Position numbers and translations under genes: made by a program
The notes under the pieces: model-generated
Seen by the model: only the letters and a program-made list of their open reading frames with translations
The model's database searches: none
What the model was told of the DNA's origin: nothing
Shown here: in pieces, positions 8,517-29,770 of the stretch
How positions within the stretch are numbered: position 1 is the stretch's first letter
Layout of the letters: every line of letters starts with the position of its first letter
Source of the DNA: Leucoraja ocellata
Lineage: Eukaryota
Direction of reading: 5' to 3'
DNA: 64,000 bases
Assembly: GCA_036785375.1 (NCBI GenBank)
Contig: JAWMAR010000054.1
Span: 3,658,001 to 3,722,000 of the forward strand

Positions 8517-8607
8517 GTAAGGAAGCCGTGTCATGCACCTTCTTCGTACTAATAAAATATACCCATTTTTGATCTTTTGTTTTTGAACAATTTTTGTTGG
8601 TTTGCAG

Positions 8608-11225: not shown

Positions 11226-11541
11226 TTAAGGCGAGTCATCTCAACGGAACCTCCAAGAAGCTGTGGTCACCGATCAACTGAACTCTGACTGAATCACACA
11301 TACATAATGTTCACTTAAGGAAGGTACCACAATGCCCAAGTATCAAACCCCACAAAGAAATGTAGGTGAAGGAAGCTGAACACTGGGTATTTATTCAGGG
11401 TTTGGGTCCAAAGTTGTTGAATAAGAAATAAGTTTATTTGCATGTAAAGTTCTAAATATGATGTGGAATGTCACATGTTGCGTTTCCTGCTCTTTTTTTT
11501 AGCTCCCATTAAACTTTGAACCTTTTGTTAACATTTTGCAG

Positions 11542-11612
11542 AACTGATGGCCTGTGAAGAACTTCATGCAGTTTTACATTTGGTTCTACAGGCGGGCAAC
11601 ATCATGAATGCT
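11542..11612 (+). CDS. FHDC1: FHDC1 coding exon, (E)LMACEELHAVLHLVLQAGNIMNA
   Basis: ttttgcag|AA acceptor, gct|gtaagt donor; 71 nt, phase 1 to 0; contains the FH2 hallmark GNxMN. Confidence 0.95.
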
Positions 11613-11701
11613 GTAAGTGATCTGTGCTGTTCATTTTGATACCACAAAGCTTCTGTGTATCTTTCTTCTCCATTGATGGTTTTCTTCTCCTTTCTCTCCA
11701 G

Positions 11702-11809
11702 GGAGGTTATGCAGGAAATGCTGTGGGGTTCAAGCTATCTTCATTGTTGAAACTAGCAGACACAAAGGCAAACAAGCCAGGAATGAACTTGCTGCATTTT
11801 GTCGTTCTG
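11702..11809 (+). CDS. FHDC1: FHDC1 coding exon, [36 protein letters not shown]
   Basis: ctctccag|GGA acceptor, ctg|gttagt donor; 108 nt, phase 0; FH2 motif AxGFKLSSLxKLxDTK with the actin-binding Lys. Confidence 0.96.
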
Positions 11810-11859
11810 GTTAGTATTTGGATATTTCCCCATATTTATTCTTCCCAATATTACCTAAA

Positions 11860-14275: not shown

Positions 14276-14279
14276 AAAT

Positions 14280-14412: not shown

Positions 14413-14904
14413 TCTTGGGAGGGCTGCCTCTCTTGAAAGGACTGTTGGTGTTCTTAGATGGTAGGAATGGAACTGGCAGAAGGAGTAGTGCTGCTCCTCA
14501 TGCAGTTTCCTAGTTCAGCCAAAGGGACTTTGACCCAGATGGCTACCTTCCTTTTTCTTTCTGCAGATTAACCCATAAGATGTAATTTTCAGTTAACCAA
14601 CTCTTTGTTTATGTTTACTAATGTGGTGCAAGTGGATAATATCCTAAAAATGAAGATCACTAAAATGTTAGCTGTTCCTTATTGTTATACTGCAATGCAT
14701 GCTGAATTTATAATCTACCGTTGTTTAGGATCCACAGTGGAGCTGCAAAAAGCAAAAATGGAAACAAGTTAGTATCCTTGCAAGATAAGCTGGTCATAGG
14801 AAAACCTTGTCTACAAGGACTGGTGACTAATTAGCAGTATTAATTTGCCAACATTTAAATAAGCGAAAACGGCATCAAAATTAGGTTTGGATACTTGATG
14901 GAAG

Positions 14905-15190
14905 TATAAAGGGTCAGCCATTTAGGACTGAGATGAGGAAAAACGTCTTCACCCACAGAGTTGTGAATCTGGAATTCTCTGCCACAGAAGGCAGGGGAGG
15001 CCAATTCATTGGATGTTTTCAAGAGAGAGTTAGATTTAGCTCTTAGGGCTGAGAGAATCATGGGATATGGGGAAAAAAGCAGGAACGGGGTATTGATTTT
15101 AGATGATCAGCCATGATCATATTGAATGGCGGTGCAGGCTCGAAGGGCCGAATGGCCTACTCCTGCACCTATTTTTCTATGTTTCTATGC
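14905..15190 (+). mobile_element. CR1 3' fragment
   Basis: CR1 3' UTR and ttctatgtttctatg tail. Confidence 0.88.
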
Positions 15191-15758
15191 TGTCTGACGC
15201 GTCCAGTATTTTCTGTTTATCTTTCATATTTACAGCATCTGCAAAAAATTTTTGTTTTCATGATACGTATCCTCATATCCCTGTATATCCCATGCTCCAT
15301 CATTACTATCCAGGGAATGTATTCTTGGTTCAATGAGAAGTGTAGCAGGGCAGGCCCAGAGCAGTCTAGGGATACCTAAATATAAGACCCCAACCCGACA
15401 AAGTTGAAGTCGGCCAATGCCTGTGTTAAATAGCACAAGTAACATGCTGTAGGGCAAAGTGACTTCATTAGCGATGGATCACGTCAAAGCTCTGCAGTCA
15501 TTCAAGTAGTGAAGAAGAAGGGTCTGGACCTGAAACATCACCCAGTCCTTCTCTCCGGAGATGCTTCCTGTCTCGCTGAGTTACTCCAGCATTTTGTGTC
15601 TGTAGTTCCTTCCTATACACTAACTATCAGCCAATCTACTCTCAGACATCAGCAAGGCAATGGAAGGTATCATTGGCACTTGCTCACCAGTTTCCTACAT
15701 AATACGACATAAATACCGAGGCAACAGTAGGAGGTCACACCTTATATATCCTGTAGAG

Positions 15759-16135
15759 CAGTGGTTCCCAACGTGGGGCGTACGCCCCACAGGGGGGCAA
15801 TTTGATTTTTAAGGGGGGCAATTGAGTGCGACTGAGGAGGTCTGGGTCCAAATTTTCGATTTTTATTTTTTTGGATTTTCCATCAGTTTTATGTAGTTTA
15901 TGTTTCAGGTGTTATTTTGAGTAAATAACTTTTTTGGGGGTAAAAAAGGTCTTTATTGTGTAGTTATTTTTTGAAGCTTGTTTAAACCAAGGTATTGGCG
16001 TTTTAAGCTTCTTCAGCTGAAACGGAGTTCATTTTTTAAATGATAAGAATTATATATCACCATATGGGGAGGGGGGCATCAGGATTTTAGAGGTGATTAG
16101 GTGGGGCATGGCCAATAAAAGGTTGGGAACCACTG
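15759..16135. mobile_element. hAT (Charlie-like) non-autonomous DNA transposon
   Basis: TIR CAGTGGTTCCCAAC...GTTGGGAACCACTG with perfect 8-bp TSD CTGTAGAG (15751-15758 and 16136-16143). Confidence 0.93.
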
Positions 16136-16579
16136 CTGTAGAGTGTGACGCACCTGTGAACTCCCATCTACCAGGTGTTAGTCAGGAGTTTAATAGAATA
16201 CACTCCACTCGCCTGGATGTATGCAACCCCAGCAGTACTGATGGTGCTCAACACCATTTAGAGCAAAGCAGTTCACTTGATTGTGGGGGGAGTGGGTAGA
16301 AAGCTGGAAGAGAGGAGGGGCAGGACAATATGTGGCAGGTAATAAATAGGTGAACACAGACAAAGGGGGGGGGGGGGGGGGGGGTTGATAGGCAGATGGT
16401 TTGAGAAAGGCAACAGATCTGCCTATCATCCCCTCATGCCTATGTTCACTTATTACCTGCCACACGTTGTCCCACCCCTCCTCTCTTCCAGCTTTCTCTT
16501 TCCCCCTCCTGCCAGGAAGAAGGATCCTGACCCGAAATGCCACTTGTCCATTTTCTCCAGGGAGGCTGCTTGACCTGGT

Positions 16580-17216
16580 GTGCTGGCCTTTTGGTGTGCT
16601 GGCCTTTATAAATCAGAGCATTGAGTATAGAAGTTGGGATGTAATGTTAAAATTGTATAAGGCATTGGTGAGGAGTATGGTGTACAATTTTGGTCGCCTA
16701 AGTATAGGAAGGATGTCAACAAAATAGAGAGAGTACAGAGGAGATTTACTAGAATGTTGCCTGGGTTTCAGCAACTAAGTTACAGAGAAAGGTTGAACAA
16801 GTTAGGGCTTTATTCTTTGGAGCGCAGAAGGTTAAGGGGGGACTTGATAGAGGTTTTTAAAATGATGAGAGGGATAGACAGAGTTGACGTGGACAAGCTT
16901 TTCCCACTGAGAGTAGGGAAGATTCAAACAAGGGGACATGACATGAGAATTAAGGGACTGAAGTTTAGGGGTAACATGAGGGGGAACTTCTTTACTCAGA
17001 GAGTGGTAGCTGTGTGGAATGAGCTTCCAGTGAAGGTGGTGGAGGCAAGTTTGTTTTTATCATTTAAAAATAAATTGGATAGTTATATGGATGGGAAGGG
17101 AATGGAGGGTTATGGTCTGAGCGCAGGTATATGGGACTAGGGGAGATTATGTGTTCGGCACGGACTAGAAGGGTCGAGATGGCCTGTTTCCGTGCTGTAA
17201 TTGTTATATGGTTATA
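16580..17216 (+). mobile_element. CR1 LINE 3' fragment, second subfamily (TTATATGG-type tail)
   Basis: ORF 16754..17140 MLPGFQQLSYRERLNKLGLYSLERRRLRGDLIEVFK; tail ttgttatatggttatat. Confidence 0.92.
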
Positions 17217-17284
17217 TGACCTGCTGAGTTACACCTGCATTTAGTGTTTTGTTTTTTTTGTAAACCAGCACCTGCAGTTCCTTG

Positions 17285-17468
17285 TTCAAGAAGGAACTGC
17301 AGATGCTGGAAGATCGAAGGTACACAAAATTGCTGGAGAAACTCAGCGGGTGCAGCAGCATCTATGGAGCAAAGGAAATAGGCGACGTTTCGGGCCGAAA
17401 CGTCGCCTATTTCCTTTGCTCCATAGATGCTGCTGCACCCGCTGAGTTTCTCCAGTAATTTTGTGTAC
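17285..17468. mobile_element. Palindromic Penelope terminal-repeat derivative
   Basis: About 75-bp near-perfect inverted arms centred on tttcgggccgaaa. Confidence 0.8.
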
Positions 17469-18573
17469 ATGCAGTTCCCTGTTTCTATCACCTGGTGGTT
17501 AGTCTCCAAAGTGCACATCATTCTGACATGGGAATATATCACTGCTCTTATACCAAAGTCTAAAACTTGGGCCTTACGACATAACCCTTTGCAGCATGAC
17601 AGCACCAGTTCACAAAGGCAACTCATGTTCCAAAACGTACATTTAAAAAAAAACTGGACAACTAAAAATGAGATAGACCATAGAAATGAAAACCATTCCT
17701 TGGCTGATAAATAATACTCATGAGTAAATTTGACTAAGAATTAAATAGTGGGAAATTGAGATTGTATCATTGTCAAAAAGGTGGATATGTTTGCCATTGG
17801 AGAGCTTGGTGACATAATATGCGCATTACATTTCAGAAAGTATGGTAGATATGCCTGGAATCAATAGCAACCTATAGGGTTTCAATCTAATATTCTTCCC
17901 ATAATTGTGATATTTCTATTTTCCAGCCTGCTTTGACATTAAACCTAATAATATTTCCAGAGTCCAGTAATTTCAGGATAACTAATTTAATTTATTACAG
18001 TATACTTTAAATTATATAAACACATAATAGTATGTCAAATGTCCTCATAATGTGTGATCCATTAATCTGTGTAGTCATTGGGAAGAAGGTTACACAAAAA
18101 GGAAGACAGGAGGTGTTGCATGTTGCTAACATCACATTTTTGGTATTTAAAAATTAAAATATGAAAACAAAATTTTTCAAAGGTAAAACTTAGATGCTTG
18201 GAATTCAGAAATTAACAAAAACATAGAGCAGATTAGTTAACATTTGATAACATTTTAACTCCTGAATTGTTCAATCCTTGCCTTTATTTATTACAGTAAT
18301 ACTGATTTGTTGTGGCTCTCCTTGCTTTTCCAAAGCAAATTAAACACAGATATATTAATTTGCATAATTATTGCTAGCTGTGGTTACATAATGGGATTCC
18401 TACACAACACCATAGCTACTCAATGGACATATTTAAACAATGGACTTGGTTGTTCTTTCCTTTAAAACACTGCATCTTACATTGTGGATCTGTTGTAGGT
18501 TGAGAGACAAGCCAGAAACAAACATTTTTATTTGGAAATTCTGACATGTTTTAAACATATATTTTCCTTCCAG

Positions 18574-18691
18574 ATTGTCCAGTGATAGCGTTAATGCCGA
18601 CCTACATTCACTTGACAGTAGAACAAAATCGATGCAAGTACATCTAAAGCAAGACGTTGACCTATTTCATCAAATGGAGGATTTCATTCAG
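18574..18691 (+). CDS. FHDC1: FHDC1 coding exon, LSSDSVNADLHSLDSRTKSMQVHLKQDVDLFHQMEDFIQ
   Basis: ccttccag|A acceptor, cag|gtgagc donor; 118 nt, phase 2 to 0. Confidence 0.92.
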
Positions 18692-18764
18692 GTGAGCCAG
18701 TATCTAATAGACAAACTAGTGCATGTCCAAATAACAGCAAGATGGAGTACAGTTTTAATTATTA

Positions 18765-19070
18765 CTAGACCAAGTGCAGACCCGTTGGGTCTGCTCCCCC
18801 AATGGTGTGATCCCCCAACCCAATATTCCACCATGCACCCGTCTCCTCCAATGGAACTGAAGCCGTTCTCAAAAGTAAGATTCCAGCACTCCCCTGCCTC
18901 TTTAAAAAAAATCCCTGCCTGCTGCAGCAGTGAAAAGTTCAGTGTTCCTGTCTTGCAACATTGTTTCGAAGTGTGTTGGAAGCTGAGGAAGGAGCAGCCG
19001 TCAACGAATCGAAAGGCAGGAAGGGATCCGTACTGCAGGCGGACTGATTTGAGTTTTATATATATATAGA
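18765..19070 (-). mobile_element. Non-autonomous Helitron
   Basis: Minus strand starts TCTATATA.., ends CAGACCCAACGGGTCTG (hairpin)-CACTTGGT-CTAG, inserted between A and T with no TSD. Confidence 0.88.
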
Positions 19071-20319
19071 TGGTGAGATGACTGCAGTTTATTTAAAAAC
19101 AGCATGGAATTCTAAGCTTCTGCGTTAGATTGCATGAGCTAGAAAAATTAACAAATGCAGGTCTGTTTGTTGCTCTGCTGGCAATCTTAATGTTCACACT
19201 GTACCTATCTCAAATGTCCAATGTTCTTCATGAGCTTTGTTTGAATTTATCGAGAATATTCAGAGTTTAGTTCTGGAGTACAATATTTATCCCACAACTG
19301 GGGTGATCAAATGACATACAATTGGTGTATACATTGGTGACTTGTGGCCATCTTCCCTTGTGTGGAATAAATCTATATTCATTGCCTAAACAAAGAACAT
19401 TCTGTTTCTCGCATAATTATAAGTATTAAATAACTGTTCAGAATTTTTGAAAGAGACCAAAAAGAACATGATTATTATGCTAACAAAATTTGGCAGCCAT
19501 TTTAAAAATTGGACTTTATTCAAAGTAACACAATAAATTCCAATCGTATTAGGTTAATGATAGAGCTAGAAAATTGTAGCTCTGTTAATGGCGGCACAAA
19601 GTTTGATCAGTAAGATTTAACTGTGCCAATTACAGGACAGAATCTTTGCTTATTCAACCTTTGCTGGATGTATCATTTAGAGCGTTTGATAGAGAATTCT
19701 ATTTCTGCTAGCAGTAGGGAAATGAATAATGTGTAAGACATGCCTAGGGAAGAAGTACTCATAAAATACGGGTGGTTAAAAAAAACCTCCAAAGGCTGTG
19801 GAGCCGGAGGATCTTGATTCAATGTTGTAGGATTTCCGAAAAAAAGTGATGGGGAGTTTGTGATTTTATTCTTGAATAATTTAACTCGCATTGAACACGA
19901 ACATAAGTAATAGGATCAGGAGCTGCCCTTGTGGTCCTCCAAGCTGGCTACACTATTGAATAAGGCAGTGGCTGATCTAATAATGATAAGATAATGATTT
20001 GCCTCATTTTCCGCAATCCCTCGCCTCCTCCTTCTTAAGAGTCAAGTTAAGAGTGTTTTATTGCCATTTGTCCCAGATAGAACAATGAAATTCTTACCTC
20101 CCCCCCCCCCCCCCCCCCCTCCTCCTCACATCTCATGATCATTAACTCGTCCATGGACAAGTAAAGTGTGCATCAGGGCCCTGAATAGATACAGTGAAAG
20201 TACCAGGCTATTTCACATTAGGCCAAAGTAATACCCAGATACATGAGGCTCATTATTTGCTTTAATTATTAAATTAATGATCAAGCTAGATAACAGGTAC
20301 TGGCTAACATTTCGTGTCA

Positions 20320-21598
20320 TCTATATATTACTAAAACTAAGATCTTGACCACTTTCTGACTTTCTGTTTCGTGATTTCTGAAAGAACGCCGCCACTTACG
20401 GCTGTGATTTTTGGCCACCTCGCTCAGAGTCCCTCTCCGCTGAGCTGGACCAGAGGATTTTTCCCATGGATGAAACATAAAAGAGTTATTAATGTTCAGA
20501 AAATGTTGATATTCTCTCTGCTGCCCCTGCTGGTGGGAGGGGGGAAGGGACTATAAAACCCGGAAGTGGTGTGCCTCAGTCAGTCTCTGCAAGATGGGGG
20601 AACTGAGAGGGTCACGTCTCTCAGTCTGAGCTGTGAATACCACTGAACACATGTCTACTAAACTGTGAGTGTGGTTTTACTTAACTTGAGTGCCCTTAAT
20701 GTGGTTTGAAAATGAAAATATGGTTGGTTTGAAGTAAAAGCACTGCAAATGGTTGGTGGGGGTTTGGGTTGAAGTTAAAAGCACTGTAAATAGTTGGTGG
20801 GGGTTTGGGTTGAGGTAAAGAGCAATGCAAATGGTTGTTTGGGGGTTTTGGGTTGAAGTAAAAAGCACTGCAAATGGTTGTTTGTCTAAACTTGACAACT
20901 TCCTGTTTGCACTGTATATTGATTTTAGATAAAAGGCTATCACCTATGGCTGTCATTTTTGGCCATCTGACTCAGTCCCCCTCTGCTCATCAGGTGCAGA
21001 GGATTCTTCCCATCAATGAAAAAATAAGTGTTATTAGTGTTTAAAAAATGTTGAGAATCTCTCTCCTGTCAATCACGCCATGAAGGCCACAGCTTTTCCA
21101 GTGGGAGGGGGAGGGATTATAAAAACCGGAAGTGTGGGTGGCTCAGTCCCTACATGATGGGGGAGGGAGAGGTCACAACTCTGAGCTGTGAATCAACTGA
21201 ACACACTGAATGTCTACTGAACTGTGAGTGTGGTGTTCTGTGTGGTTTTATGGTGGCCTTGCACCCTGCATGAAATGGTATGAAACTGCACGAATTTGGT
21301 GGCCTTGCACCCTGCTTGAAATGGAATTTCAAGGAATAGCCGTGAGTCAACTGCCATCCCACCAGCCGTGAGTGAGCTGCCAGCACATCAGGCTTGAGGG
21401 TCTGAGCTGCCACCCCAAGAATCCATTTGGCCCACAATGTCCATATTAGCCCTCGGGAGACCAGTCCCTTCAGCCCACAACACCCATACCAGCACTCCAG
21501 AAAGCCTGGAATTGTAATTGGTGGAGAGGTGGAATATTGCGTCGGGGGACCAGCCCTCCCGTGTGAACATGGGACCCAACTGGTCCCACTCAGTCTAG
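20320..21598 (+). mobile_element. Non-autonomous Helitron with internal ~290-bp duplication and ~40-bp tandem repeats
   Basis: A|TCTATATATTACTAAAAC ... GGGACCCAACTGGTCCC hairpin, ACTCAGT-CTAG|T; duplicated blocks about 20385-20675 and 20935-21235; tandem units about 20720-20880. Confidence 0.88.
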
Positions 21599-21873
21599 TT
21601 TGCTTCTAAAATCTTAATAACTATAATTTAGAAGAACAAGAAAGCTAGATTTTTTCAAAAACATCATCATTTAGATTACCTGATTTTAGGACATTATTGC
21701 AATGTAACCTGTATGCTGTTTGCAGATAATGATTTGTGAGAGATTCACTGTATCTTAATTGGTACACGTGGCAATAAAATACCTTTGAACTTTTTGAACC
21801 ATTGAGAATGAAGGCACAATGTTATTTCTGTTCATCGCGTGTTTGCTGATGTACTGTATATCTTACCCTGCAG

Positions 21874-22038
21874 CAAGGTTTGGGAGAAGTGGACAGATTA
21901 GAGGCACAACGGATGGAATTGCAGAGGGAAGCCAATACTCTCATTGATTTCTTCTGTGAAGACAAAGAAACAATGAAATTAGAAGAATGCTTCAAAATTT
22001 TCCAAGACTTTTGTGATAGATTCAAAAAAGCTGTCAAG
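21874..22038 (+). CDS. FHDC1: FHDC1 coding exon, QGLGEVDRLEAQRMELQREANTLIDFFCEDKETMKLEECFKIFQDFCDRFKKAVK (end of FH2)
   Basis: ccctgcag|CAA acceptor, aag|gtaagt donor; 165 nt, phase 0; FH2 C-terminal motif FFCED...F.IF.DF. Confidence 0.94.
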
Positions 22039-22044
22039 GTAAGT

Positions 22045-22158
22045 GGGCCCGAAACGTTGCCTATTTCCTTCGCTCCATAGATGCTGCTGCACCCGCTGAG
22101 TTTCTCCAGCTTTTTTGTGTACCTTCGATTTTCCAGCATCTGCAGTTCCTTCTTAAAC
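22045..22158 (+). mobile_element. Penelope terminal-repeat fragment directly after an FHDC1 splice donor
   Basis: gggcccgaaacgttgcctatttcc..ccagcatctgcagttccttctt; reverse complement of about 17288-17396. Confidence 0.82.
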
Positions 22159-22243
22159 ACAACTACGCTGACTTGCCTGTGAACCATTTTGTCGGCTTTT
22201 GGAATGAGGGATTTCTGATTGCCTCACTGTCACCAAATATATA

Positions 22244-22258
22244 CAGTAGATGGCGCTG
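22244..22258 (+). promoter_or_regulatory. CTCF-like motif CAGTAGATGGCGCTG
   Basis: Close match to CTCF core CCASYAGRKGGCRSY in non-repeat intron sequence. Confidence 0.55.
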
Positions 22259-22361
22259 TTTACTGAATAATTAAAGGAAAGCTCTCATAACTCTGAAACC
22301 TAAAATCTGAAGCAAATCTTAAAATAAGATAACAACCAAATGTATTGTAAGTGCAGCTGAG

Positions 22362-22840
22362 TAGACAATAGACAAATAGGTGCAGGAGTAGACCATTCGG
22401 CCCTTCAAGCCAGCACCGCCATTCAATGTGATCATGGCTGATCATCCCCAATCAGTACCCCGTTCCTGCCTTCGCCCCATATCCCCTGACTCCGCTATTT
22501 TCAAGAGCCCTATCTAGCTCTCTCTTTAAAGCATCCAGAGAACCTGCCTTCACCGCCCTCTGAGGCAGAGAATTCCACAGACTCGCCACTCTCTGTGAGA
22601 AAAAAGTGTTTCCTCGTCTCCATTCTAAATTGCTTACTCCTTATTCTTAAACTGTGGCCCTGGACTCCCCCAACATCGGGAATATGTTTCCTGCCTCTAG
22701 CGTGTCAAAGGCCTTAACAATCTTATATGTTTCAATGAGATTTCCTCTCATTCTTCTAAACTCCAGAGTGTACAAGCCCAGCTGCTCCATTCTCTCAGCA
22801 TATGACAGTCCCGCCATCCCAAGAATTAACCTTGTAAACC
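22362..22840 (-). mobile_element. CR1 3' fragment
   Basis: Reverse complement of the CR1 3' end with agacaatagac tail. Confidence 0.9.
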
Positions 22841-23924
22841 TATGAATAAGAATGATGAATGAATAAGTTTATTGGCCAAGTATTCCCATACAAGGAATTT
22901 GCCTTGGTGCTCTGCCCGCAAGTGACAACATGACATACAGTGACAGTTAGGAATGACACATAAAACATTAAACATTAATAATAAAACATTATTGATTAAA
23001 CATGTGAATTCAATAAAATACCAGAGCAAAAGGAGGCTACAGATTTTTGGTTATTGAGTAGAGCTACTACTCGTGGGGAAAAAAAGCTGTTTTTATGCCT
23101 GGCTGTGGCAGCTTTGACAGTACGGTATCAGACAACCAAAAAATCAGCCTTCATTTGAAAAACATTTGAGGTTGATGTTGCAATTGGTGCATGCCCCGTC
23201 TCGGACCGACAATGAAACATCGACTGGACATCGCTCTGCGTTGACTGAGGTTTCTCAAGCTGGGCAGCTCCAGGTGTTTTACTGGCTTTGCTGCAGGTGA
23301 GAGAAAGGAGCCATCGTCTCCAGTCCTGATGCTAATCAGTGACTCAAACTAATATTTTATGTAGACAGACATTCTTCAAGGACAAAATCTAGATCAGTTA
23401 TGATTACAGATCATGAATCAAAACAAAAATCCTGTCTGATTTAATGCACAACTTAAAATAACATTTTGGTCAATGAACATTAGAGGGAATAGCTATAAGG
23501 TGGGAGGGTAATGTTTAGCCTGATCACTGCCAAGTTATTCTTCACTATTGGCCATGAGCCTTGTATATCCACCACATATCATATCAGTGTGTCCATAATG
23601 AAGATGTGTGGGGCAAGGTTTTACACAGAGAGTGGTGGAAGACCTGGAACACAAGGCCAAGGGTGGTGGTGGAGGCAGCAGAGATGATAGTGGTGTTTGA
23701 GGCTTTTGCATAGACACTTAGAAGTGCAGGAAATAAAGGAATATGGATCATGTACAGGCAGATGTGATCAGTTTAACTTGGCATCATGTTTAGCTCAAAC
23801 ATGGTGGCCTGAAGGGTTCCTTCCTGGGCTGTTCTGTTCTGTTCTATTAATTATTATCTATAGAATGGAGAAGGGCCCACTGAATCACACTTGTAAATTC
23901 CATCCTGCCCAAAGACCATAAGAC

Positions 23925-24542
23925 TAATCAGAGCATTGAGTATAGAAGCTGGGATGTAATGTTAAAATTGTACAAGGCATTGGTGAGACCAAATCTGGAG
24001 TATGGTGTACAATTTTGGTTGCCTAATTATAGGAAGGATGTCACCAAAATAGAGAGAGTACAGAGGAGATTTACTAGAATGTTGCCTGGGTTTCAACAAC
24101 TAAGTTACAGAGATGGGTTGAATAAGTTAGGTCTTTATTCTCTGGAGCGCAGAAGGTTAAGGGGGGACTTGATAGAGGTCTTTAAAATGATGAGAGGGAT
24201 AGACAGATTTGATGTGGACAAGCTTTTCCCTTTGAGAATAGGGAAGATTCAAACAAGAGGACATGACTTCAGAATTAAGGGACAGAAGTTTAAGGGTAAC
24301 ATGAGGGGGAACTTCTTTACTCAGAGAGTGGTAGCTGTGTGGAATGAGCTTCCAGTGGAAGTGGTGGAGGCATGTTCGTTGGTATCATTTAAAAATAAAT
24401 TGGATAGGCATATGGATGAGAAGAGAATGGAGGGTTATGGTATGAGTGCAGGCAGGTGGGACTAAGGGAAAAAAAATTGTTCGGCACGGACTTGTAGGGC
24501 CGAGATGGCCTGTTTCCGTGCTGTAATTGTTATATGGTTATA
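23925..24542 (+). mobile_element. CR1 LINE 3' fragment, second subfamily
   Basis: ORF 23959..24465 MLKLYKALVRPNLEYGVQFW..; near-identical to 55376-55989 (-). Confidence 0.93.
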
Positions 24543-24804
24543 ATGGGCTCTTTTGAGAGTTAATATAGGAAATATCAATGTTTTCTCCAGAAGAGGGGAG
24601 ATGTTTGAACCAAACAAATTATTCTAAGAAGAAAATAACTGAATTGTATTTGTGATTTTCAGACATTTTTGCCACAAGGGATTCTCCAAAATATCATTCA
24701 TAATCTAGGATTAGAAAGATTTATTTTATGTTGTGCATCAAATTGGACAGGAGTTTTGTTTTGAATTTCCATGTCAACATAATTCAAGAAGCATCATTAG
24801 TCAA

Positions 24805-25265
24805 TGTTCAAGTCAAGTCAAGAGAGTTTATTCCCAGACGGGACAATGAAATCATCAGCACTACAGCACACAGAATATAGTAGGCACAAATACAGAACAT
24901 ATTAGATTAGATTAGATTAGATTCCTTTATTGTCATTCAGACCTTTCGGTATGAACGAAATTTCGATGCCTGCAGTCATACATAATAATAATAAACAACA
25001 AAACATACAATAAACACAAATTAGCATCCACCACAGTGAGTCCACCACATGTCATATCAGTGAGTCCATATACCATTATATAAATATATACACACATCAA
25101 TAAATAAGCAGTTAAAGTGCAAATAAACAGATAATGGTCTCTTAATGTTCAGAGATTTGTTTCAGTTGAGTTTAATAGCCTGATGGCTGTGGGGAAGTAG
25201 CTATTTCTGACCCTGGACGTTGCAGTCTTCAGGCTCCTGTACCTTCTACCTGAAGGTAGCGGGGA
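24805..25265 (-). mobile_element. Rex1-type 3' fragments, nested ((ACTTG)n tail and (ATCTA)n tail)
   Basis: caagtcaagtcaag and attagattagattag tails; tagcctgatggctgtggggaag body. Confidence 0.65.
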
Positions 25266-25359
25266 GTTAATGTGGGGATTTTGCGTTTATTTATTTAAGG
25301 GAAATTGGCATTAAAATAAAATAATGAATTAATGAAAAACTAATCTCTGTACCCCATAG

Positions 25360-27756
25360 GAAAACAGAGACAGAGAAATTAAGGAACTCTGTCAACAACA
25401 AAGGCAAAAGGAATTGGATGAGAAACGGCATTCGTGGGCTGCTGGTGAACGGAGTATCTTTGGAAGGAGTAGTAGCGAAAATGATGTGAAACTGCTCATC
25501 AAGGATGGACTACATGACCTAATAGCTTTCACTCATCCGAGATCTCAAAGCCCCGGGAGTGTGAAGAGAAATAGAAGCAGACGTTTGCGCTCATCGGAAG
25601 GTGCTGCTATTGACAGCCATTTATTGTCATTTTTGCAGGCTGCACATACAGAAGAACAAGCTAAGTCAAACAGTATCCCTCGTTCTGTTGCACGTAGCTC
25701 TAGACAGAGGGTAGCCTGGCAAAAGATGTCAGAAACCCATGATGGAAGCTTAGATAGTGCCCACTTTGACTCCAATCAGGGCTGTGCTCATACCACAGTT
25801 ATAAAAGACAGCTATCCCTGCTTGGCTTCAGCTGAGCCGTGCACTGCTAGGAATACAGAGACCGCTCCTACAGAGAACTTCGCAAAGACTGAAAGTGCAA
25901 TTGGTCAGCATGAACAAGATGCCTACAATAACAATGAGAATATAATAAAGGATAATGCCCACACAAAGTATACAGACATCACGAACCTTAACCAGATGAT
26001 TGCCTCCGAACAGCAGCTTGAGCTTCTTGAAGGCTTACAGATTTTCAATTGCACCAGTGCCGCTGACTCTAGCCAAGTGACGACCTGTGATGATGTTACA
26101 CTAACAGACCTGGAGTACAGCGAAGACCTGAGTTTGCAGACTCCTACAGATGTGAGTTTGTCGACACCGAGTACAGATGTGAGTGTGCAGACTCCAAGTA
26201 CAGATGTGGGCATGCAAACTCTCAGTATAGATGTGGGTGTGCAGACTCCCAGTGCAGATGTGAGTGTGCAGACACCTAGTACAGATGTGAGTGTACAAAC
26301 TCCTAGTACAGAGGAGAATCTGCAGACTACTGATACAGATGTCAGTGTGCAGGCCTGTGACACAGATATGAGTCCCCTGATGTCTAGCACCAGTGTAGGC
26401 ATTCAGACATCCTCTAGCTCTGATTCTGGTGCATTTTCTGGTCTGGTCTCAAAGATATTTGATGGTGAGTCTTACTGCTTTACGGATTCTCGGTCATTAC
26501 CACAGAAAATAAAGAATATAGAAGGCACTGAAGTATCCATCCAGAGTTCAGATGCAACGAATAACAAGGAAAGCAGAACGGTGTTTTTTGTTTTGGGATA
26601 TACAGGAGGTGGAGATTGTTCTGAACCTTCAGAGCAATGTGAAGTCAAAGCTGCCTGCCAGAAAATCCAAGTAGAATCACACCACCAATTTAAAAGCCCT
26701 AAAGGAGATCACACTGAAGTTTCTAATGATTTGTCGGACAATTCTCTCATTCCCATTACCAAAAATATAACCATTAATAATGACCGTGCTATTGAGGCAG
26801 CCTCGGAGACAATGAACTTACCAAAGGTAGCAAAGCAGATTTGCAGTTTAAAGCAGCCTAGTACGGTTAGAGGAGAAGCATTGCCCACTCCAAAATCAAC
26901 TTTGCATTGTTTGAGCAGTCCAGTTCCTCCTAAAACCTCAAGGACAACAAACCACCCTAATAACGAGGAAATGAGGAGGGTTTTGCCAATATCAAAGTCA
27001 AGTAGAAGATCCAACAGTGTCAGAAGACCAGAAGCAAAAGCATTAAGTAATGATGAACAAAAACACTCTCATAAGGCTTCAGGGTCAAAGTGGCGAGACG
27101 GTTTGTCAAAGACTCCTCGCAGGTCCAGCTATCCAGTGGCAGAACAAAAGCCAACAAAAGAGACTGCTGCTTTGGCAAACTCATCTAATAGCATTGCAAA
27201 GCGTAAAGACTCCCTCAGAAAACCTGCCGCTAAGCCAGTCCGAAATATCCCCAAGCCAAAGCCTGATGAAAGCAGTAAGATTTGTCGCTCAGTTACAAGA
27301 AGCTTCCCCAGGCACAGCACAAATACAGGCGGAACAACAGAGTCCACGGGAGGAAATAGCAATTCAGCCTCACCAATGCTTACTCCCAACTTTGCCAGAA
27401 ACACTGTGGCCTCTTCCTCTCGACGCCAGAGGACAGATCCCAGACCGATTCCCAGCACACCTCCACAGCCCGCCAAAGCAACAAACCTCACCAGAACCTC
27501 TTCGCAGAGGCAATCTACGCCCAAGCACGTTGGGACAAACCATACAAAGAGCAGTGAAAATACCAGCATGAAACGGCCAAGTACCCAAAAACTGGGGAGC
27601 AAGACCGAAGAGGAGGAGAAGGCACCAACATGCAAAACACAGTCCACCTACACAGGCGACAACACTTCGCAAACATCAGCCGAAAAGAAACACCTTCCAG
27701 CCACAGATTCCATTAGAAGCAAGAAAACTCCAGAAAGATCATCGAAGTGGAAGTAA
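25360..27756 (+). CDS. FHDC1: FHDC1 terminal coding exon (798 aa + stop): coiled coil, GRSSSENDV motif, QT-repeat array, Ser/Thr/Lys-rich microtubule-binding tail
   Basis: ccccatag|GAA acceptor in frame with the 780-aa ORF 25414..27756; ENRDRE..RHSWAAGERSIFGRSSSENDV, MRRVLPISKS, KPVRNIP and PNFARNTVASSSR match my recollection of conserved FHDC1 C-terminal blocks. Confidence 0.93.
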   Translation, partial: ENRDREIKELCQQQRQKELDEKRHSWAAGERSIFGRSSSENDVKLLIKDGLHDLIAFTHPRSQSPGSVKRNRSRRLRSSEGAAIDSHLLSFLQAAHTEEQAKSNSIPRSVARSSRQRVAWQKMSETHDGSLDSAHFDSNQGCAHTTVIKDSYPCLASAEPCTARNTETAPTENFAKTESAIGQHEQDAYNNNENIIKDNAHTKYTDITNLNQMIASEQQLELLEGLQIFNCTSAADSSQVTTCDDVTLTDLEYSEDLSLQTPTDVSLSTPSTDVSVQTPSTDVGMQTLSIDVGVQTPSADVSVQTPSTDVSVQTPSTEENLQTTDTDVSVQACDTDMSPLMSSTSVGIQTSSSSDSGAFSGLVSKIFDGESYCFTDSRSLPQKIKNIEGTEVSIQSSDATNNKESRTVFFVLGYTGGGDCSEPSEQCEVKAACQKIQVESHHQFKSPKGDHTEVSNDLSDNSLIPITKNITINNDRAIEAASETMNLPKVAKQICSLKQPSTVRGEALPTPKSTLHCLSSPVPPKTSRTTNHPNNEEMRRVLPISKSSRRSNSVRRPEAKALSNDEQKHSHKASGSKWRDGLSKTPRRSSYPVAEQKPTKETAALANSSNSIAKRKDSLRKPAAKPVRNIPKPKPDESSKICRSVTRSFPRHSTNTGGTTESTGGNSNSASPMLTPNFARNTVASSSRRQRTDPRPIPSTPPQPAKATNLTRTSSQRQSTPKHVGTNHTKSSENTSMKRPSTQKLGSKTEEEEKAPTCKTQSTYTGDNTSQTSAEKKHLPATDSIRSKKTPERSSKWK
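26125..26409 (+). repeat. Coding 27-bp tandem repeat (9-aa unit, consensus TDVSVQTPS) in the FHDC1 terminal exon
   Basis: Units DLSLQTPT, DVSLSTPST, DVSVQTPST, DVGMQTLSI, DVGVQTPSA, DVSVQTPST, DVSVQTPST, EENLQTTDT, DVSVQACDT, then SVGIQTS; DNA unit about acagatgtgagtgtgcagactccnagt. Confidence 0.95.
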
Positions 27757-29770
27757 AATGTTTTATTGATCACTTAGAGCTTAGGGCAGTAGCAAGTTAA
27801 AATCTTTGTAGACCTTCCCGAATGGAAGTTCTCCCTTTGTGTGCCTGCAGTTCGATTTTCCATTGGTGTGTATTGGTGTTCTGCGTTGGTCAAACATGCC
27901 GGGTCTTGCCGGCAAGAATCAGTTATCTTTTGTGAACCATCCTTTGTGGCACCAAGAAATGGAGCAGGAAACTGCCAGGACCAGCTCTGCCTTTCAGACA
28001 TGAATCTCCTGCCATTCATTCACAAATTCATTGATGTACAGAAAAAGCCAGTTGGCCTTATCGCATCTAAACATGGCAGCAAGAGGCAGAGATTGGAAAT
28101 CCAGTGGGGGGGATGATAATTGAATTTGGAAATAATAATCCCATTCGACAGAGGCCGAACCAGATCTCAGCAGCGTTTGGTAAAGTTGCGACGTATTTGC
28201 TAATTCCTCAGGAAGAAGTACCGATCCGTGGTATTTTCAGGATTAAGTGTGAGTGCTGCTTCTCCGTGATGGATTTTGATCCATTCCATGAAAATGTCAA
28301 GAAGCTAAGCTAGCTTTATATCTCTCTGCAGCTGGTGAATGTATCTTTTTAAAATGTCAAGATTAAATCTTCCAATTTTTAGAAGATGGCTATTTATAGT
28401 TATGGTGGGCTCCTACTTTCTTTTTAAGGGAGGAAAGTACTGGTGCTAAGGAATAGAAATGTATAGAGAAACTAGTGGACGACTGAGTGGGCTGGAGTTT
28501 CCACTTGATTACATAGTTGCAGCACAATAATTTATTTTTTGTATTGTGATATGAATAATGTGTATAAATACACAGTGCATAGCATATTCTGTACAGTATT
28601 GGTATATCTTAGTTAAACTCCATGGACGGGATAACTATTGTGTTCAGTCACTTTCACCAAGGGCTCATTACGACTATAGAGATTGGAACCAAGGGTTGAA
28701 GGGACCACTATATGTAGCTGGGACAAGTCAATATAAATTGATACTTTTTCTGGTCGCCCCTATGTTGGAGGAGTCACATGAGTGCAAACCGATGAACATT
28801 GTAGAGTTCTTACTCTGAAACACAACGATAGCCCATTCGATGTCGAACGTTGGCTGGTGAATTTTGAACACAAGCAGTGCCACGAAACAGCCGCACACTT
28901 TGTAGTTAATGATATCCTTATATTGAATATTGTGCTAGTATGCATATGGGGATGTTGCACTGTTTCTTCAGCAGTTGGCTTTTTACTGATGTCATTAAAC
29001 ATGAAAGCTGCTCGTTTGTCTGCAACTGCTTTGTTAGGCCTGTGCCTGTCCGAGCAATGGCGTATGGGACATTTCCTGCTCTCGTTCTATAGTGTTTTTT
29101 ATGGGGCTATGTTACACCCAAATTTCTCTCCAGGTGGTACTTTAACCTAAAAAATATATATTTTTGTTAGATATGAGATCATTATATCTCTTAACAGCCA
29201 CACATACTGCCTGTGAAACGGACAAGACTGAATGTGGGTAGGACTGCTTCTGAAGCTGCCCCATTTACTTGAGATGAATGTTTTTTTACTATTGGCAGAT
29301 TAAGGAATTCCAGTCTCTTATTGTTTGTAATTCAATTAGCATGGGGTGTTACTACACATCCGCAAAAGTGTTAGAGTTTAGTGTAATATAACAAGACTGA
29401 TTTACCTCCTGAAGAGGTCAATTTTAAAGTGTCTATTTTTTTTCGTCTTCATAATTTGGTCATTTGGATTTGAGGATTGAATTTGGCTTCATTGTCCATT
29501 CCAACCCGTGTGTATTGCGCCCTCTGGTGGCATTGTGTAACATATCTATGGTAATTGCTTTCTTTTACCGTTCCATCTGCATCCACCCTCATTAACTATT
29601 AAATTGCAACGGCTCAATGGACGTTCAAATTTTAAGATCACCTTACATTTGTAAACAAAAGTGATGTATCTCTGTAAATTGAAATGAAGTGTTGTAGTAT
29701 TTGCACGTTCCACATAACTCCTGTTCAGTCAAGTATTAAAAGTCAGTTCTGTCCCATCAAATAGTGATTG
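27757..29770 (+). other. FHDC1: Probable FHDC1 3' UTR
   Basis: About 2 kb after the stop with no recognisable transposon, unlike the flanks; candidate ATTAAA signals at 29598-29603 and 29735-29740, the latter followed by GT-rich sequence; exact end is inferred. Confidence 0.6.
29517..29532 (-). promoter_or_regulatory. CTCF motif TGCCACCAGAGGGCGC
   Basis: Reverse complement of gcgccctctggtggca is an essentially perfect CTCF core. Confidence 0.7.

What the first reader, a model, noticed from the sequence alone, without database searches (positions are those of the whole stretch)
26125..26409. Tandem array of LC8/DYNLL-type QT motifs inserted in the tail of the formin FHDC1
Seen: a 27-bp/9-aa repeat gives DLSLQTP, DVSVQTPS (x3), DVGMQTLS, DVGVQTPS, ENLQTTD and SVGIQTS (plus degenerate DVSLSTP and DVSVQAC) in an acidic, low-complexity region of the terminal exon. 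Units differ mostly at third codon positions (CAG/CAA, ACT/ACA, CCT/CCA/CCC/CCG), which suggests selection on the peptide rather than plain slippage. Established: dynein light chain LC8 binds D/S-x-x-[TVI]-Q-T motifs (Bim DKSTQTPS, Bmf DKATQTLS), and multivalent QT arrays occur in ASCIZ/ATMIN and Nup159. FHDC1/INF1 is a dimeric, microtubule-associated formin. Inference: this lineage may have gained a multivalent LC8 ladder between the FH2 dimer and the microtubule-binding tail, which could stiffen or dimerise the linker or tune it to LC8 levels. I do not recall such an array in mammalian FHDC1. The 9-residue spacing is tight but close to one LC8 groove footprint.
Basis: partly seen in the sequence, partly recalled or inferred. 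Interest (0 to 1): 0.85.

Follow-up and report, generated by a model that had tools for sequence, protein, structure and literature searches.

The report
Nine-residue QT repeat in skate FHDC1
The last exon of a skate formin gene (FHDC1) carries a real, transcribed tandem repeat of nine amino acids, shared by sharks and skates but not by bony vertebrates, whose units look like docking sites for the dimerising hub protein LC8, though no binding has been shown.

Summary
A 27-bp, in-frame array (9 units, window 26122-26361; TRF score 224) lies in the last exon (25360-27756) of FHDC1, which is confirmed by FH2 exons upstream and named orthologues. Spliced transcripts and RNA reads keep the array.

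It is not a gain of this lineage alone. All 7 other elasmobranch FHDC1 clusters found carry it, with 3-15 units. None of 144 non-elasmobranch FHDC1-type proteins does; they hold at most a single seed box.

The LC8 reading is plausible but unproven. Skate units (DVSVQTPS, DVGVQTPS) meet the published positional rules and nearly equal validated VQT binders.

Four results count against it:
- Shark units carry LQT, and the one LQT peptide tested in print did not bind.
- T(+1) is no better conserved than average.
- Among six skates, QT is hit as often as other positions.
- The 9-residue period leaves at most 1 linker residue, against 3 or more in known ladders.

Rivals are an acidic spacer, a Thr-Pro phospho-array, and a beta-rich fold.

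I put LC8 binding at about 0.4.

The parts
26122..26361 (+). In-frame array of 9 nonapeptide units (27 bp each; units 1-2 are spaced 24 bp), consensus T-D-V-S-V-Q-T-P-S
   Evidence: TRF. Unit coordinates and translations. pN/pS between units 0.27-0.57.
26173..26307 (+). Core units 3-7. Four of them are 'classic' sites: V at -1, Q, T, with D at -4, V at -3, S or G at -2 and P at +2. The fifth is DVGMQTLS.
   Evidence: Rule-based classing, using the rules read in PMC6607443 section 9.
26389..26412 (+). Outlying TSVGIQTS site, 9 codons after the array. It is kept in all 6 skate sequences but not in sharks.
   Evidence: Three of 3 IQT peptides in Table 2 of PMC6607443 were non-binders.
25360..27756 (+). 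Last coding exon of FHDC1 (798 codons plus stop). The acceptor AG lies at 25358-25359.
   Evidence: tblastn of stored skate proteins matches 25360-27753. RNA contigs begin to fit at 25358.
21868..22038 (+). Preceding exon, the end of the FH2 domain (…FKKAVK)
   Evidence: Pfam FH2, E 9e-8. tblastn.
11541..11833 (+). FH2 exon(s) carrying [29 protein letters not shown]. tblastn gives two pieces, 11541-11612 and 11702-11833.
   Evidence: Pfam FH2, E 1.5e-10. tblastn.
26860..27753 (+). Basic, Ser/Pro-rich C-terminal tail with blocks invariant across vertebrates (F678-S687 of the exon, FARNTVASSS). It corresponds to the microtubule-binding part of mouse FHDC1.
   Evidence: Net charge +11 to +15 per 100 residues. 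Invariant columns. MTBD passages.

Best explanation
**What is there (shown).** The feature is an old coding minisatellite in the tail of the formin FHDC1. A single short box found in jawed vertebrates ([DE][DE]LS[LFI], next to a conserved TDLE) was amplified, before sharks and skates split or in parallel afterwards, into a head-to-tail array of nonapeptides T-D-V-S-[L/V]-Q-T-P-[D/S]. The array has 3-15 units depending on species and 9 units here. It is transcribed and kept in spliced mRNA.

**How it most likely works (inferred).** The array is a multivalent short-linear-motif platform for the dimeric hub protein LC8/DYNLL.
- Each unit is an amphipathic beta-strand former ended by proline. V(-3), V/L(-1) and T(+1) lie on one face, which is the face that enters the LC8 groove in solved complexes. 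D(-4), Q(0) and P(+2) match the preferred residues.
- The FH2 domain is a dimer (established knowledge of formins), so two tails are presented side by side. LC8 dimers could zip them in register and turn a flexible acidic linker into a stiffer rod between the actin-nucleating head and the basic microtubule-binding tail.
- The period is only 9 residues, so neighbouring units can probably not all be filled. I expect occupancy of about every second unit, with sliding registers.
- The Thr-Pro in 45 of 75 units would allow a proline-directed kinase to switch binding off, as reported for Bim.

In skates the core units have the validated VQT anchor. In sharks they have LQT, which may bind weakly or not at all.
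For: - **Gene and place:** FH2 exons, named FHDC1 orthologues, exon map.
- **Expression:** oligo-dT RNA reads cover the array bins at about the depth of the rest of the exon. Two Logan contigs are spliced: 1085 aa on 3770 nt and 844 aa on 3363 nt. Both cross the 22038|25360 junction and carry all 9 units. Every one of the five further annotated shark entries read (isoforms and fuller gene models of three species) keeps it.
- **Age and constraint:** the array is present in 8 of 8 elasmobranch species-level sequences. The unit consensus is 7/9 identical between skate and sharks, while 150-residue flanks are 43-61% identical. pN/pS between units is 0.27-0.57, and lowest at D(-4) 0.14, Q(0) 0.18 and T(+1) 0.20. 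Over 75 units the two least-kept positions are -5 and +3, at or outside the edge of the LC8 core footprint.
- **Fit to LC8 rules** (PMC6607443 section 9): the rules ask for a polar residue or D at -4, a residue at least Val-sized at -3, no bulky aromatic at -2, mid-sized residues at -1 and +1, Q at 0, and P/D/E at +2. Four of 9 window units and 5 of 10 Amblyraja units pass with [TVI] at -1.
- **Validated binders in that paper's Table 2**: ZFPM1 DKGVQTPS differs from unit DVGVQTPS only at -3. SON CVSVQTD has the same VSVQT. MAST1 QSVQTE also binds. That is 3 of 3 VQT peptides binding.
- **Avidity:** bivalent presentation raises LC8 affinity 80- to more than 500-fold (PMC3078936).
- **Weak motifs can suffice:** weak non-canonical motifs with short linkers form cooperative LC8 rods in KANK1 (preprint 10.1101/2025.07.16.665182, abstract and Discussion).
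- **Phospho-switch precedent:** JNK phosphorylation of the Thr in Bim's LC8 site is reported to release it (as cited in PMC2362050).
Against: - There are no binding data.
- 56 of 75 units have Leu at -1. That is outside the classical [T/V/I] set (abstract of PMC3078936), and the one LQT peptide tested (PLK1) did not bind.
- ANKIB1 DVSSQTPQ shares the DVS-x-QTP frame and did not bind.
- T(+1) deviates from the species consensus in 15 of 75 units, which is the average over positions. Replacements include I, M, A, N and P.
- Anchors are broken in 22 of 75 units.
- Among six skate sequences the array is not better kept than the rest of the tail: 8/80 against 47/695 variable columns, Fisher p 0.26. 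Three of the 8 changes hit Q or T(+1).
- The period of 9 leaves at most 1 linker residue. The shortest known linkers are 3 (dASCIZ), 3-4 (KANK1) and 4-5 (Nup159), and 3 already gives heterogeneous complexes.
- The ELM expression quoted in PMC5746249 is not matched.
- An abalone extracellular mucin-like protein has about 30 PDVVVQTSS nonapeptides, so such repeats arise without LC8.
- Disorder is not shown: the charge-hydropathy value is borderline.
- The best-kept core, D-[VL]-S-[LV], is shared with the QT-less seed box of bony vertebrates. The selected element may therefore not be QT.
Confidence: 0.4

Rival explanations
1. An acidic, low-complexity spacer with no specific partner. The array is kept only as a frame-preserving, Ser/Thr/Asp-rich stretch of the already acidic mid-tail. 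Its copy number drifts by slippage or unequal exchange, and the likeness to LC8 motifs is coincidence.
For: - Copy number runs from 3 to 15, with conserved first and last units and a variable interior.
- Anchors are broken in 22 of 75 units.
- The array evolves no slower than the rest of the tail among skates.
- The same region is acidic in bony vertebrates without any array.
- An unrelated extracellular abalone protein has a similar nonapeptide array.
- No Pfam family passes its cut-off.
Against: - The unit consensus is 7/9 identical between skates and sharks, against 43-61% in the flanks.
- pS between skate units is about 0.4 while pN/pS is 0.27-0.57.
- Seven consecutive positions are kept and two are free. 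This looks like selection on a peptide, not on composition alone.
Confidence: 0.28
2. A proline-directed phospho-acceptor array that tunes charge. The repeated Thr-Pro sites are phosphorylated by CDK- or MAPK-type kinases. This adds negative charge to a stretch that already has net -13 over 80 residues. The stretch then acts as a phospho-platform, like the Spt5 C-terminal nonapeptide repeats. Or it folds back on the strongly basic microtubule-binding tail and lowers its affinity for microtubules.
For: - TP occurs in 45 of 75 units.
- The best match among solved structures is the Spt5 nonapeptide TP repeat region, E 0.0023. This is an analogy of period and TP, not homology.
- The array has net -13 with no Lys or Arg, while the tail has +11 to +15 per 100 residues.
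- One unit in both named skates is S-T-P, the core recalled for Polo-box binding. FHDC1 is linked to Cep170, a PLK1 partner.
Against: - P(+2) is kept in only 56 of 75 units and T(+1) in 60 of 75. D(-4), S(-2) and Q(0) are kept better, which a bare TP site does not explain.
- There is no full CDK ([ST]Px[KR]) or MAPK (Px[ST]P) context (read from the units; the consensus patterns are recalled).
- No phosphorylation data exist.
- This reading is compatible with, and may coexist with, LC8 binding.
Confidence: 0.2
3. A self-folding beta-rich repeat domain (beta-roll or solenoid-like). Each nonapeptide gives one short strand (V-S-V-Q-T) and one turn (P-S/D-T-D), stacked into a rod without any partner.
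For: - Hydrophobic and polar residues alternate strictly, with a Pro/Asp turn.
- Charge-hydropathy is on the border, not clearly disordered.
- There is a sub-threshold Pfam hit to the beta-strand repeat family Toastrack DUF4097: E 0.008, 16 bits against a cut-off of 22.9.
Against: - Pristiophorus has only 3 units, too few for a solenoid.
- Units are irregular at the ends and many carry Pro, Gly or charge changes.
- No family or solved structure matches above threshold.
- Structure prediction could not be run.
Confidence: 0.07
4. Not part of the mature protein: an assembly artefact, or a segment spliced out of the mRNA.
For: Short-read contigs break inside the array. Depth over the exon is low, at 1-7 reads.
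Against: - The same array occurs in six skate sequences from different sources and in six sharks.
- Two spliced transcript contigs carry it whole.
- RNA reads cover the array bins at the depth of the flanks. No listed joint skips it, although 92 joints were not shown.
Confidence: 0.02

Closest known systems
Multivalent LC8/DYNLL clients: ASCIZ/ATMIN, Nup159, KANK1 L2, Chica
   Same: Several QT-type motifs lie in a row in a non-globular stretch of a protein that is itself dimeric. The expected result is a duplex 'ladder' that stiffens or aligns two chains. Weak motifs can be rescued by multivalency, as in KANK1.
   Different: - Here the sites are exact tandem repeats made by a 27-bp minisatellite, not independent motifs.
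- The period is 9 residues, leaving at most 1 linker residue, against linkers of 3 to more than 40.
- The anchor is VQT in skates and LQT in sharks, never TQT.
- Valency varies from 3 to 15 between species.
- No binding has been shown.
   Same: Skate unit DVGVQTPS equals the ZFPM1 site at 7 of 8 positions. DVSVQTP shares VSVQT with SON. The T-P after Q is as in Bim, whose Thr phosphorylation is reported to release LC8.
   Different: Position -3 is Val, not Lys or Arg. The sites are repeated without spacers.
FHDC1/INF1 of mouse and human
   Same: Same gene: FH1-FH2 head, long non-globular middle, and basic C-terminal microtubule-binding domain. The roles are on Golgi-derived microtubules and at the basal body.
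   Different: Bony-vertebrate proteins have at most one seed box (for example DDLSFHS in birds, EDLSLYS in coelacanth) and no array. All 144 non-elasmobranch FHDC1-type proteins seen have at most 2 [TVILM]QT per 120 residues. I found no report linking FHDC1 and LC8.
Spt5 C-terminal repeat region (nonapeptide TP repeats)
   Same: Period 9, with one Thr-Pro per unit in a tandem array. It was the best hit among solved-structure sequences, E 0.0023.
   Different: There is no homology, only shared period and TP. The rest of the unit differs, as do the protein and the cell compartment.
Mucin-like nonapeptide array of an abalone membrane protein (P0040, Haliotis rufescens)
   Same: About 30 units of S-S-P-D-V-V-V-Q-T: the same period and the same D-V-x-V-Q-T core.
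   Different: It lies beside SEA, Ig and chitin-binding domains after a transmembrane segment, so it is extracellular and out of LC8's reach. It shows that the motif-like repeat can arise for other reasons.

Membership tests
FHDC1 (FH2 domain-containing protein 1) orthologue | FH2 domain exons on the same strand upstream of the exon | tested here: met
   Pfam FH2 E 1.5e-10 and 9e-8 on two exon ORFs. The 9e-8 match scores 32.1 bits, just under Pfam's 34.8-bit cut-off. tblastn of skate FHDC1 proteins maps 7 pieces from 8591 to 27753.
FHDC1 (FH2 domain-containing protein 1) orthologue | Best hits over the whole tail are proteins that their sources name FHDC1; conserved C-terminal blocks | tested here: met
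   94% identity to Amblyraja radiata FHDC1 and 53-58% to six sharks. FARNTVASSS and other columns are invariant across 16 vertebrate sequences.
LC8/DYNLL-binding linear motif | Anchor: Q at 0 with mid-sized H-bonding or hydrophobic residues at -1 and +1 (classically [TVI]-Q-[TV]) | tested here: inconclusive
   Met by 4 of 9 window units and 5 of 10 Amblyraja units (VQT). In sharks only 1 of 56 units is met; 33 have L at -1 and pass the flank rules, and the rest are broken or off in the flanks. The only LQT peptide in the published tables did not bind.
LC8/DYNLL-binding linear motif | Flank preferences: polar residue or Asp at -4, at least Val-sized at -3, no bulky aromatic at -2, P/D/E at +2 | tested here: met
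   Over 75 units: D at -4 in 72, V/L/M at -3 in 71, S/N/G at -2 in 75, and P at +2 in 56. The rules are from PMC6607443 section 9.
LC8/DYNLL-binding linear motif | Match to the ELM regular expression ([^P].K.TQT, as quoted in PMC5746249) | tested here: not met
   No unit has K at -3 or T at -1. The same paper says only 13 of 67 known motifs match it, so this is a weak criterion.
LC8/DYNLL-binding linear motif | Lies in an accessible, intrinsically disordered stretch | tested here: inconclusive
   Charge-hydropathy H is 0.463 against a boundary of 0.472.
LC8/DYNLL-binding linear motif | Direct binding to LC8 that mutation of the anchor abolishes | not testable with these tools
   This needs ITC, FP or pull-down. 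No multimer prediction tool was available.
LC8/DYNLL-binding linear motif | [quoted passage not shown] | not tested
   The matrices are in a figure and in supplements, which were closed. There is no web access.
Multivalent LC8 ladder (ASCIZ, Nup159, KANK1 type) | Several motifs in one chain of a dimeric or oligomeric client | tested here: met
   There are 8 QT sites within 97 residues. FH2 dimerisation is established knowledge and was not tested here.
Multivalent LC8 ladder (ASCIZ, Nup159, KANK1 type) | Linkers of 3 or more residues between 8- to 10-residue motifs, so that neighbouring LC8 dimers fit | tested here: not met
   The period is 9 residues in 65 of 67 spacings and 8 in 2. Known linkers are 3 residues at the shortest (dASCIZ), 3-4 (KANK1) and 4-5 (Nup159).
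Coding minisatellite | Head-to-tail units whose length is a multiple of 3; copy number differs between related species; edge units are conserved | tested here: met
   Period 27. Unit counts are 9, 10, 15, 11, 11, 8, 3 and 8 in eight species. Among skates, 9 against 10.
Proline-directed phospho-acceptor repeat (Spt5 CTR-like) | One Ser/Thr-Pro per unit | tested here: inconclusive
   TP occurs in 45 of 75 units. The kinase and any phosphorylation are unknown.

The most novel reading that the evidence does not exclude
Sharks and skates turned a single conserved box of the formin FHDC1 into the most tightly packed natural LC8 ladder known, with one site every 9 residues. Its valency is set by minisatellite slippage (3 to 15 sites), and its anchor shifted from LQT to the validated VQT in skates. 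LC8 would zip the two tails of the FH2 dimer into a rod of species-specific length between the actin-nucleating head and the microtubule-binding tail. Thr-Pro phosphorylation would unzip it. This would be a natural titration series for the rules of multivalent LC8 assembly, and the first formin regulated by LC8.
Probability: 0.3. Interest if true: 0.7.

Novelty: new variant of a known kind. Interest (0 to 1): 0.5.

Why it matters
If the array binds LC8, it would link the LC8 hub to a formin that couples actin and microtubules at the Golgi and the basal body. It would also add to the reported expansion of LC8 partners in the cilium and centrosome system.

For the LC8 field it would offer something no studied client has: identical motifs at a fixed, very short spacing, with valency ranging from 3 to 15 between species. 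That makes questions about linker length, cooperativity and register directly testable with natural sequences.

It would also show a route by which a linear-motif array can arise, namely amplification of one pre-existing conserved box by a coding minisatellite.

If it does not bind LC8, it remains a clear case of an old lineage-specific coding repeat in a conserved cytoskeletal gene. It would also be a caution that QT-containing nonapeptide repeats arise on their own, as in the abalone protein.

Tried and rejected
- **Structure and disorder of the tail.** A charge-hydropathy estimate was borderline.
- **LC8Pred or a PSSM score.** The matrices are in a figure and in supplements, which I could not see, so I used the rules stated in the text instead.
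- **Holocephalans and rays.** None appeared in three homology searches or in the representative search. The age of the array beyond 'sharks plus skates' is therefore open.
- **Other motif readings, checked by eye against the units** (patterns recalled, not from a call):
  - Fbw7 phosphodegron: position +4 is Asp, not Ser/Thr/Glu.
  - SxIP: the spacing is wrong.
  - Caspase DxxD: P4 is Pro.
  - SUMO-interaction motif: only two hydrophobic residues.
  - Polo-box S-T-P: found in one unit only.
  
  None fits as many positions as the LC8 rules do.
- **Pfam and PDB sequence searches of the array.** These gave only sub-threshold, low-complexity matches.
- **Literature.** FHDC1 with DYNLL1 gave 6 papers, with neither term in a title or abstract. 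I opened one of them, which mentions the two separately. FHDC1 with LC8 gave 3 papers, none about an interaction as far as the listing and the passages of PMC7855621 show. The FHDC1/elasmobranch search listed no paper holding FHDC1 among its top 10. Supplementary interactome tables, for example the FHDC1 BioID list of PMC6080654, could hold DYNLL1 and could not be seen.


Full report
**1. The observation**

The sequence at 26125-26409 is as described. Tandem Repeats Finder reports one array at 26129-26352: period 27, 8.4 copies, 77% matches, score 224. It lies in a 780-codon + strand ORF.

The frame stays open upstream to a polypyrimidine-AG acceptor at 25358-25359, so the exon runs 25360-27756. 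In that frame there are nine units:

| Unit | Start | Peptide |
|---|---|---|
| 1 | 26122 | EDLSLQTPT |
| 2 | 26146 | TDVSLSTPS |
| 3 | 26173 | TDVSVQTPS |
| 4 | 26200 | TDVGMQTLS |
| 5 | 26227 | IDVGVQTPS |
| 6 | 26254 | ADVSVQTPS |
| 7 | 26281 | TDVSVQTPS |
| 8 | 26308 | TEENLQTTD |
| 9 | 26335 | TDVSVQACD |

A separate TSVGIQTS follows at 26389-26412. The other two frames hold stops or unrelated peptides.

Variable sites by codon position are 8/6/8 for all nine units and 3/2/5 for units 3-7. Nei-Gojobori pN/pS between units is still below one: 0.57 for all nine, 0.34 for units 2-7 and 0.27 for units 3-7. pS is about 0.40-0.45, so the units are old copies rather than recent slippage products. 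The lowest per-position ratios are at D(-4) 0.14, Q(0) 0.18 and T(+1) 0.20. With nine 27-base units, these figures carry no test of significance.

**2. The gene**

Two upstream ORFs on the same strand match Pfam FH2 (E 1.5e-10 and 9e-8; the second, at 32.1 bits, is just under Pfam's 34.8-bit cut-off).

The exon's translation finds proteins that their sources name FH2 domain-containing protein 1:
- Amblyraja radiata at 94% identity;
- six sharks at 53-58% (Heterodontus, Stegostoma, Scyliorhinus torazame, Cetorhinus, Pristiophorus, Chiloscyllium);
- then birds, turtles, sturgeons, bichir and teleosts.

tblastn of stored skate proteins against the window places exon pieces at 8591-8707, 11541-11612, 11702-11833, 12950-13021, 18557-18718, 21868-22038 and 25360-27753. 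I searched exons one by one and built no joined model.

The array sits at exon residues 255-334. It follows the FH2 end and precedes a basic tail. That tail has net +11 to +15 per 100 residues and blocks invariant across vertebrates such as FARNTVASSS. In mouse FHDC1 the C-terminal part from residue 958 is the microtubule-binding domain (passages of PMC4713130 and PMC6080654).

**3. Expression**

I laid four runs of a close relative on 21850-27840. The relative is a coded organism, and its contigs differ from the window by about 1-2.5%.
- Two oligo-dT RNA-seq runs, read as raw reads, cover the whole last exon thinly.
- The bins that hold the array (26050-26249 and 26250-26449) have summed depths of about 2 to 7, like the neighbouring bins.
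- Contigs of two further runs begin to fit at 25358, with 13 and 62 earlier letters not placed in the listing. That fits the acceptor.
- Contigs break inside the array, as short-word assemblies do at repeats.
- No listed joint removes the array, but 92 joints were not shown and depth is low.

Stronger evidence comes from the 90% cluster of the Amblyraja protein, which holds four unnamed Logan proteins. P0085 has 1085 residues on a 3770-base contig, and P0086 has 844 residues on a 3363-base contig. Both run from FH2 exons straight into the last exon. They can therefore only be spliced transcripts, and both carry nine units. The five further annotated entries read for Heterodontus, Stegostoma and Scyliorhinus (isoforms or fuller gene models) all keep the array.

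**4. Distribution**

Every elasmobranch FHDC1 found has the array at the same place, between a conserved TLTDLE..EDLSLQTP start and a conserved FFVLGY block.

| Species | Units |
|---|---|
| Window skate | 9 |
| Amblyraja | 10 |
| Heterodontus | 15 |
| Stegostoma | 11 |
| Scyliorhinus | 11 |
| Cetorhinus | 8 |
| Pristiophorus | 3 |
| Chiloscyllium | 8 |

- Spacing is 9 residues in 65 of 67 intervals.
- The shark consensus is TDVSLQTPD and the skate consensus TDVSVQTPS, identical at 7 of 9 positions. In contrast, 150-residue flanks are 43-61% identical between the window and the sharks.
- First and last units are recognisably orthologous, while the interior varies. That is the usual behaviour of a minisatellite.

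A search restricted to residues 225-425 found only these seven clusters. The representative search, which reads every protein, gave 49 hits. A whole-length search with the Cetorhinus protein listed the same seven elasmobranch clusters, with coelacanth next. No chimaera or ray turned up, so the array's origin can only be placed at or before the shark-skate ancestor, or in parallel expansions after it.

Bony vertebrates have at most one box at this place and no array:
- coelacanth: LEDLSLYSSST
- a frog: EDLSLRSFSF
- birds: DDLSFHSLST
- a turtle: DDLSLRSLST

Of 159 fetched proteins with the FHDC1 tail signature, the 15 elasmobranch entries have 2-9 [TVILM]QT in their densest 120-residue window. 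The 144 others have 0 (119 proteins), 1 (17) or 2 (8). That sample is heavily weighted towards birds.

**5. Which positions are kept**

Counts over 75 units:

| Position | Commonest residue(s) | Units with it | Deviations from own-species consensus |
|---|---|---|---|
| -5 | T | 52 | 23 |
| -4 | D | 72 | 3 |
| -3 | V | 61 | 14 |
| -2 | S | 65 | 10 |
| -1 | L 56, V 12 | – | 14 |
| 0 | Q | 68 | 7 |
| +1 | T | 60 | 15 |
| +2 | P | 56 | 19 |
| +3 | D | 36 | 30 |

There are thus seven kept positions in a row and two free ones. Within the seven, however, the best kept are D, Q, S and V, not the QT pair.

Among six close skate sequences, 8 of 80 ungapped array columns vary, against 47 of 695 outside (Fisher p 0.26). 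Three of the eight changes hit Q(0) or T(+1): Q to H in unit 1, and T to N and T to A elsewhere. Q passes and T does not.

**6. Fit to LC8**

I read sections 9, 12 and 23 of Jespersen et al. 2019 (PMC6607443), plus passages of its Tables 1 and 2. The stated rules are:
- Q at 0;
- mid-sized H-bonding or hydrophobic residues at -1 and +1;
- P, D or E at +2;
- no bulky aromatic at -2;
- a side chain at least as large as Val at -3;
- a polar residue such as Asp, and nothing hydrophobic larger than Ala, at -4.

The skate units DVSVQTP and DVGVQTP meet all of them. By a rule script, 4 of 9 window units and 5 of 10 Amblyraja units are 'classic'.

The same tables give mixed evidence:
- **For:** validated binders are ZFPM1 DKGVQTPS (7 of 8 positions equal to DVGVQTPS), SON CVSVQTD (same VSVQT) and MAST1 QSVQTE. 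That is three of three VQT peptides binding.
- **Against:** three of three IQT peptides did not bind, one of them from the formin FMN2. PLK1 KMLQTDP, the only LQT peptide, did not bind. ANKIB1 DVSSQTPQ, which has the same frame but S at -1, did not bind.

Leu at -1 is outside the classical [T/V/I] set (abstract of PMC3078936), and 56 of 75 units have it. The ELM expression quoted in PMC5746249 is not matched, though that paper says it misses most known sites.

Two points favour the LC8 reading. Presenting a motif as a dimer raises affinity 80- to more than 500-fold (PMC3078936). A recent preprint reports that KANK1 binds 15 or more LC8 dimers through motifs too weak to bind alone (abstract and Discussion of 10.1101/2025.07.16.665182).

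**7. Spacing**

The shortest linkers described are 3 residues in Drosophila ASCIZ, where they already give heterogeneous complexes and 'steric pressure'. KANK1 has 3-4 and Nup159 has 4-5. A period of 9 leaves one residue, or none, between 8- to 10-residue motifs.

I infer that neighbouring units cannot all be occupied. If LC8 binds, it would fill about every second unit, in more than one register. This was not tested.

**8. Other readings**

- **Acidic spacer.** The array has net charge -13 over 80 residues and no Lys or Arg. It precedes a strongly basic tail, and the mid-tail is acidic in bony vertebrates too.
- **Phospho-array.** Thr-Pro occurs in 45 of 75 units. The best match among solved-structure sequences is the nonapeptide TP repeat region of Spt5, E 0.0023; this shares period and TP only. 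A phospho-tunable acidic module acting on the basic tail is therefore a fair rival. It could also coexist with LC8 binding, since phosphorylation of the Thr in Bim's LC8 site is reported to release it (as cited in PMC2362050).
- **Beta-rich fold.** This cannot be excluded. Hydrophobic and polar residues alternate, charge-hydropathy is borderline, and there is a sub-threshold Toastrack hit.
- **Coincidence.** An abalone membrane protein with SEA, Ig and chitin-binding domains carries about 30 PDVVVQTSS nonapeptides in what must be its extracellular part. Such repeats therefore arise without LC8.

**9. Literature**

- FHDC1 with DYNLL1: six papers, neither term in a title or abstract. I opened one of them, and it mentions the two apart.
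- FHDC1 with LC8: three papers, none about an interaction by listing and passages.
- The FHDC1 BioID screen names Cep170, EB1, Snap29 and Arl2 in its text. Its full table is supplementary and was closed.

**10. Verdict**

The feature is real, coding, expressed and old. The claim that 'this lineage' gained it is too narrow.

The LC8 reading is the best specific mechanism I can name, and it is strongest for skates. It rests on motif likeness alone, and it meets real objections: Leu anchors in sharks, average conservation of T(+1), and a spacing below any known ladder.

I put it at about 0.4. The rivals are a partner-less acidic spacer at about 0.28, a phospho/charge module at about 0.2, a self-folding repeat at about 0.07 and an artefact at about 0.02.

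Noticed in passing
window 22050-23050 and 23850-24650: The intron before the last exon holds transposon-derived sequence, including a 168-codon ORF at 23959-24465 that looks like the tail of a reverse-transcriptase-type element. RNA-seq depth there is hundreds to thousands on both strands, far above the FHDC1 exon. Similar ORFs recur at 16754-17140, 55460-55966 and elsewhere.
   Followed up: no
window about 12170-12620: A run of N lies inside an FHDC1 intron, seen as runs of X in ORF translations.
   Followed up: no
window 11541-11612 and 11702-11833: tblastn splits one conserved FH2 stretch into two pieces in different frames, 89 bases apart. This could be a very short intron or an indel in the assembly.
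   Followed up: no
window 20724-20880 and 724-820: Two further non-coding tandem repeats: 41 bp x 3.8 copies and 48 bp x 2.0 copies.
   Followed up: no
P0040 (Haliotis rufescens, residues about 230-520): About 30 tandem nonapeptides S-S-P-D-V-V-V-Q-T sit in a membrane protein with SEA, Ig and chitin-binding domains. This looks like a convergent look-alike of the FHDC1 unit in an extracellular setting.
   Followed up: partly
window about 27270-27300 (exon residues about 637-646, KPVRNIPKPKPDE): A block kept across vertebrates in the basic tail contains x-N-I-P, which resembles the SxIP motif recalled for EB1 binding. EB1 is named among FHDC1 BioID hits in PMC6080654.
   Followed up: no
window about 26580-26640 (exon residues about 406-425, VFFVLGYTGGGDCSEPSE): A short hydrophobic-acidic box about 70 residues after the array is recognisable in sharks, coelacanth, birds and teleosts ([FY][FY][VI]..[CD]T..DCS). 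D419 is invariant in 16 sequences. Its function is unknown.
   Followed up: no
P0029 (Elephantulus edwardii FHDC1), mid-tail: A single stretch GSLQSPDTSDPS resembles one shark unit (VSLQTPDTD). It may be chance or a remnant of the ancestral box.
   Followed up: no
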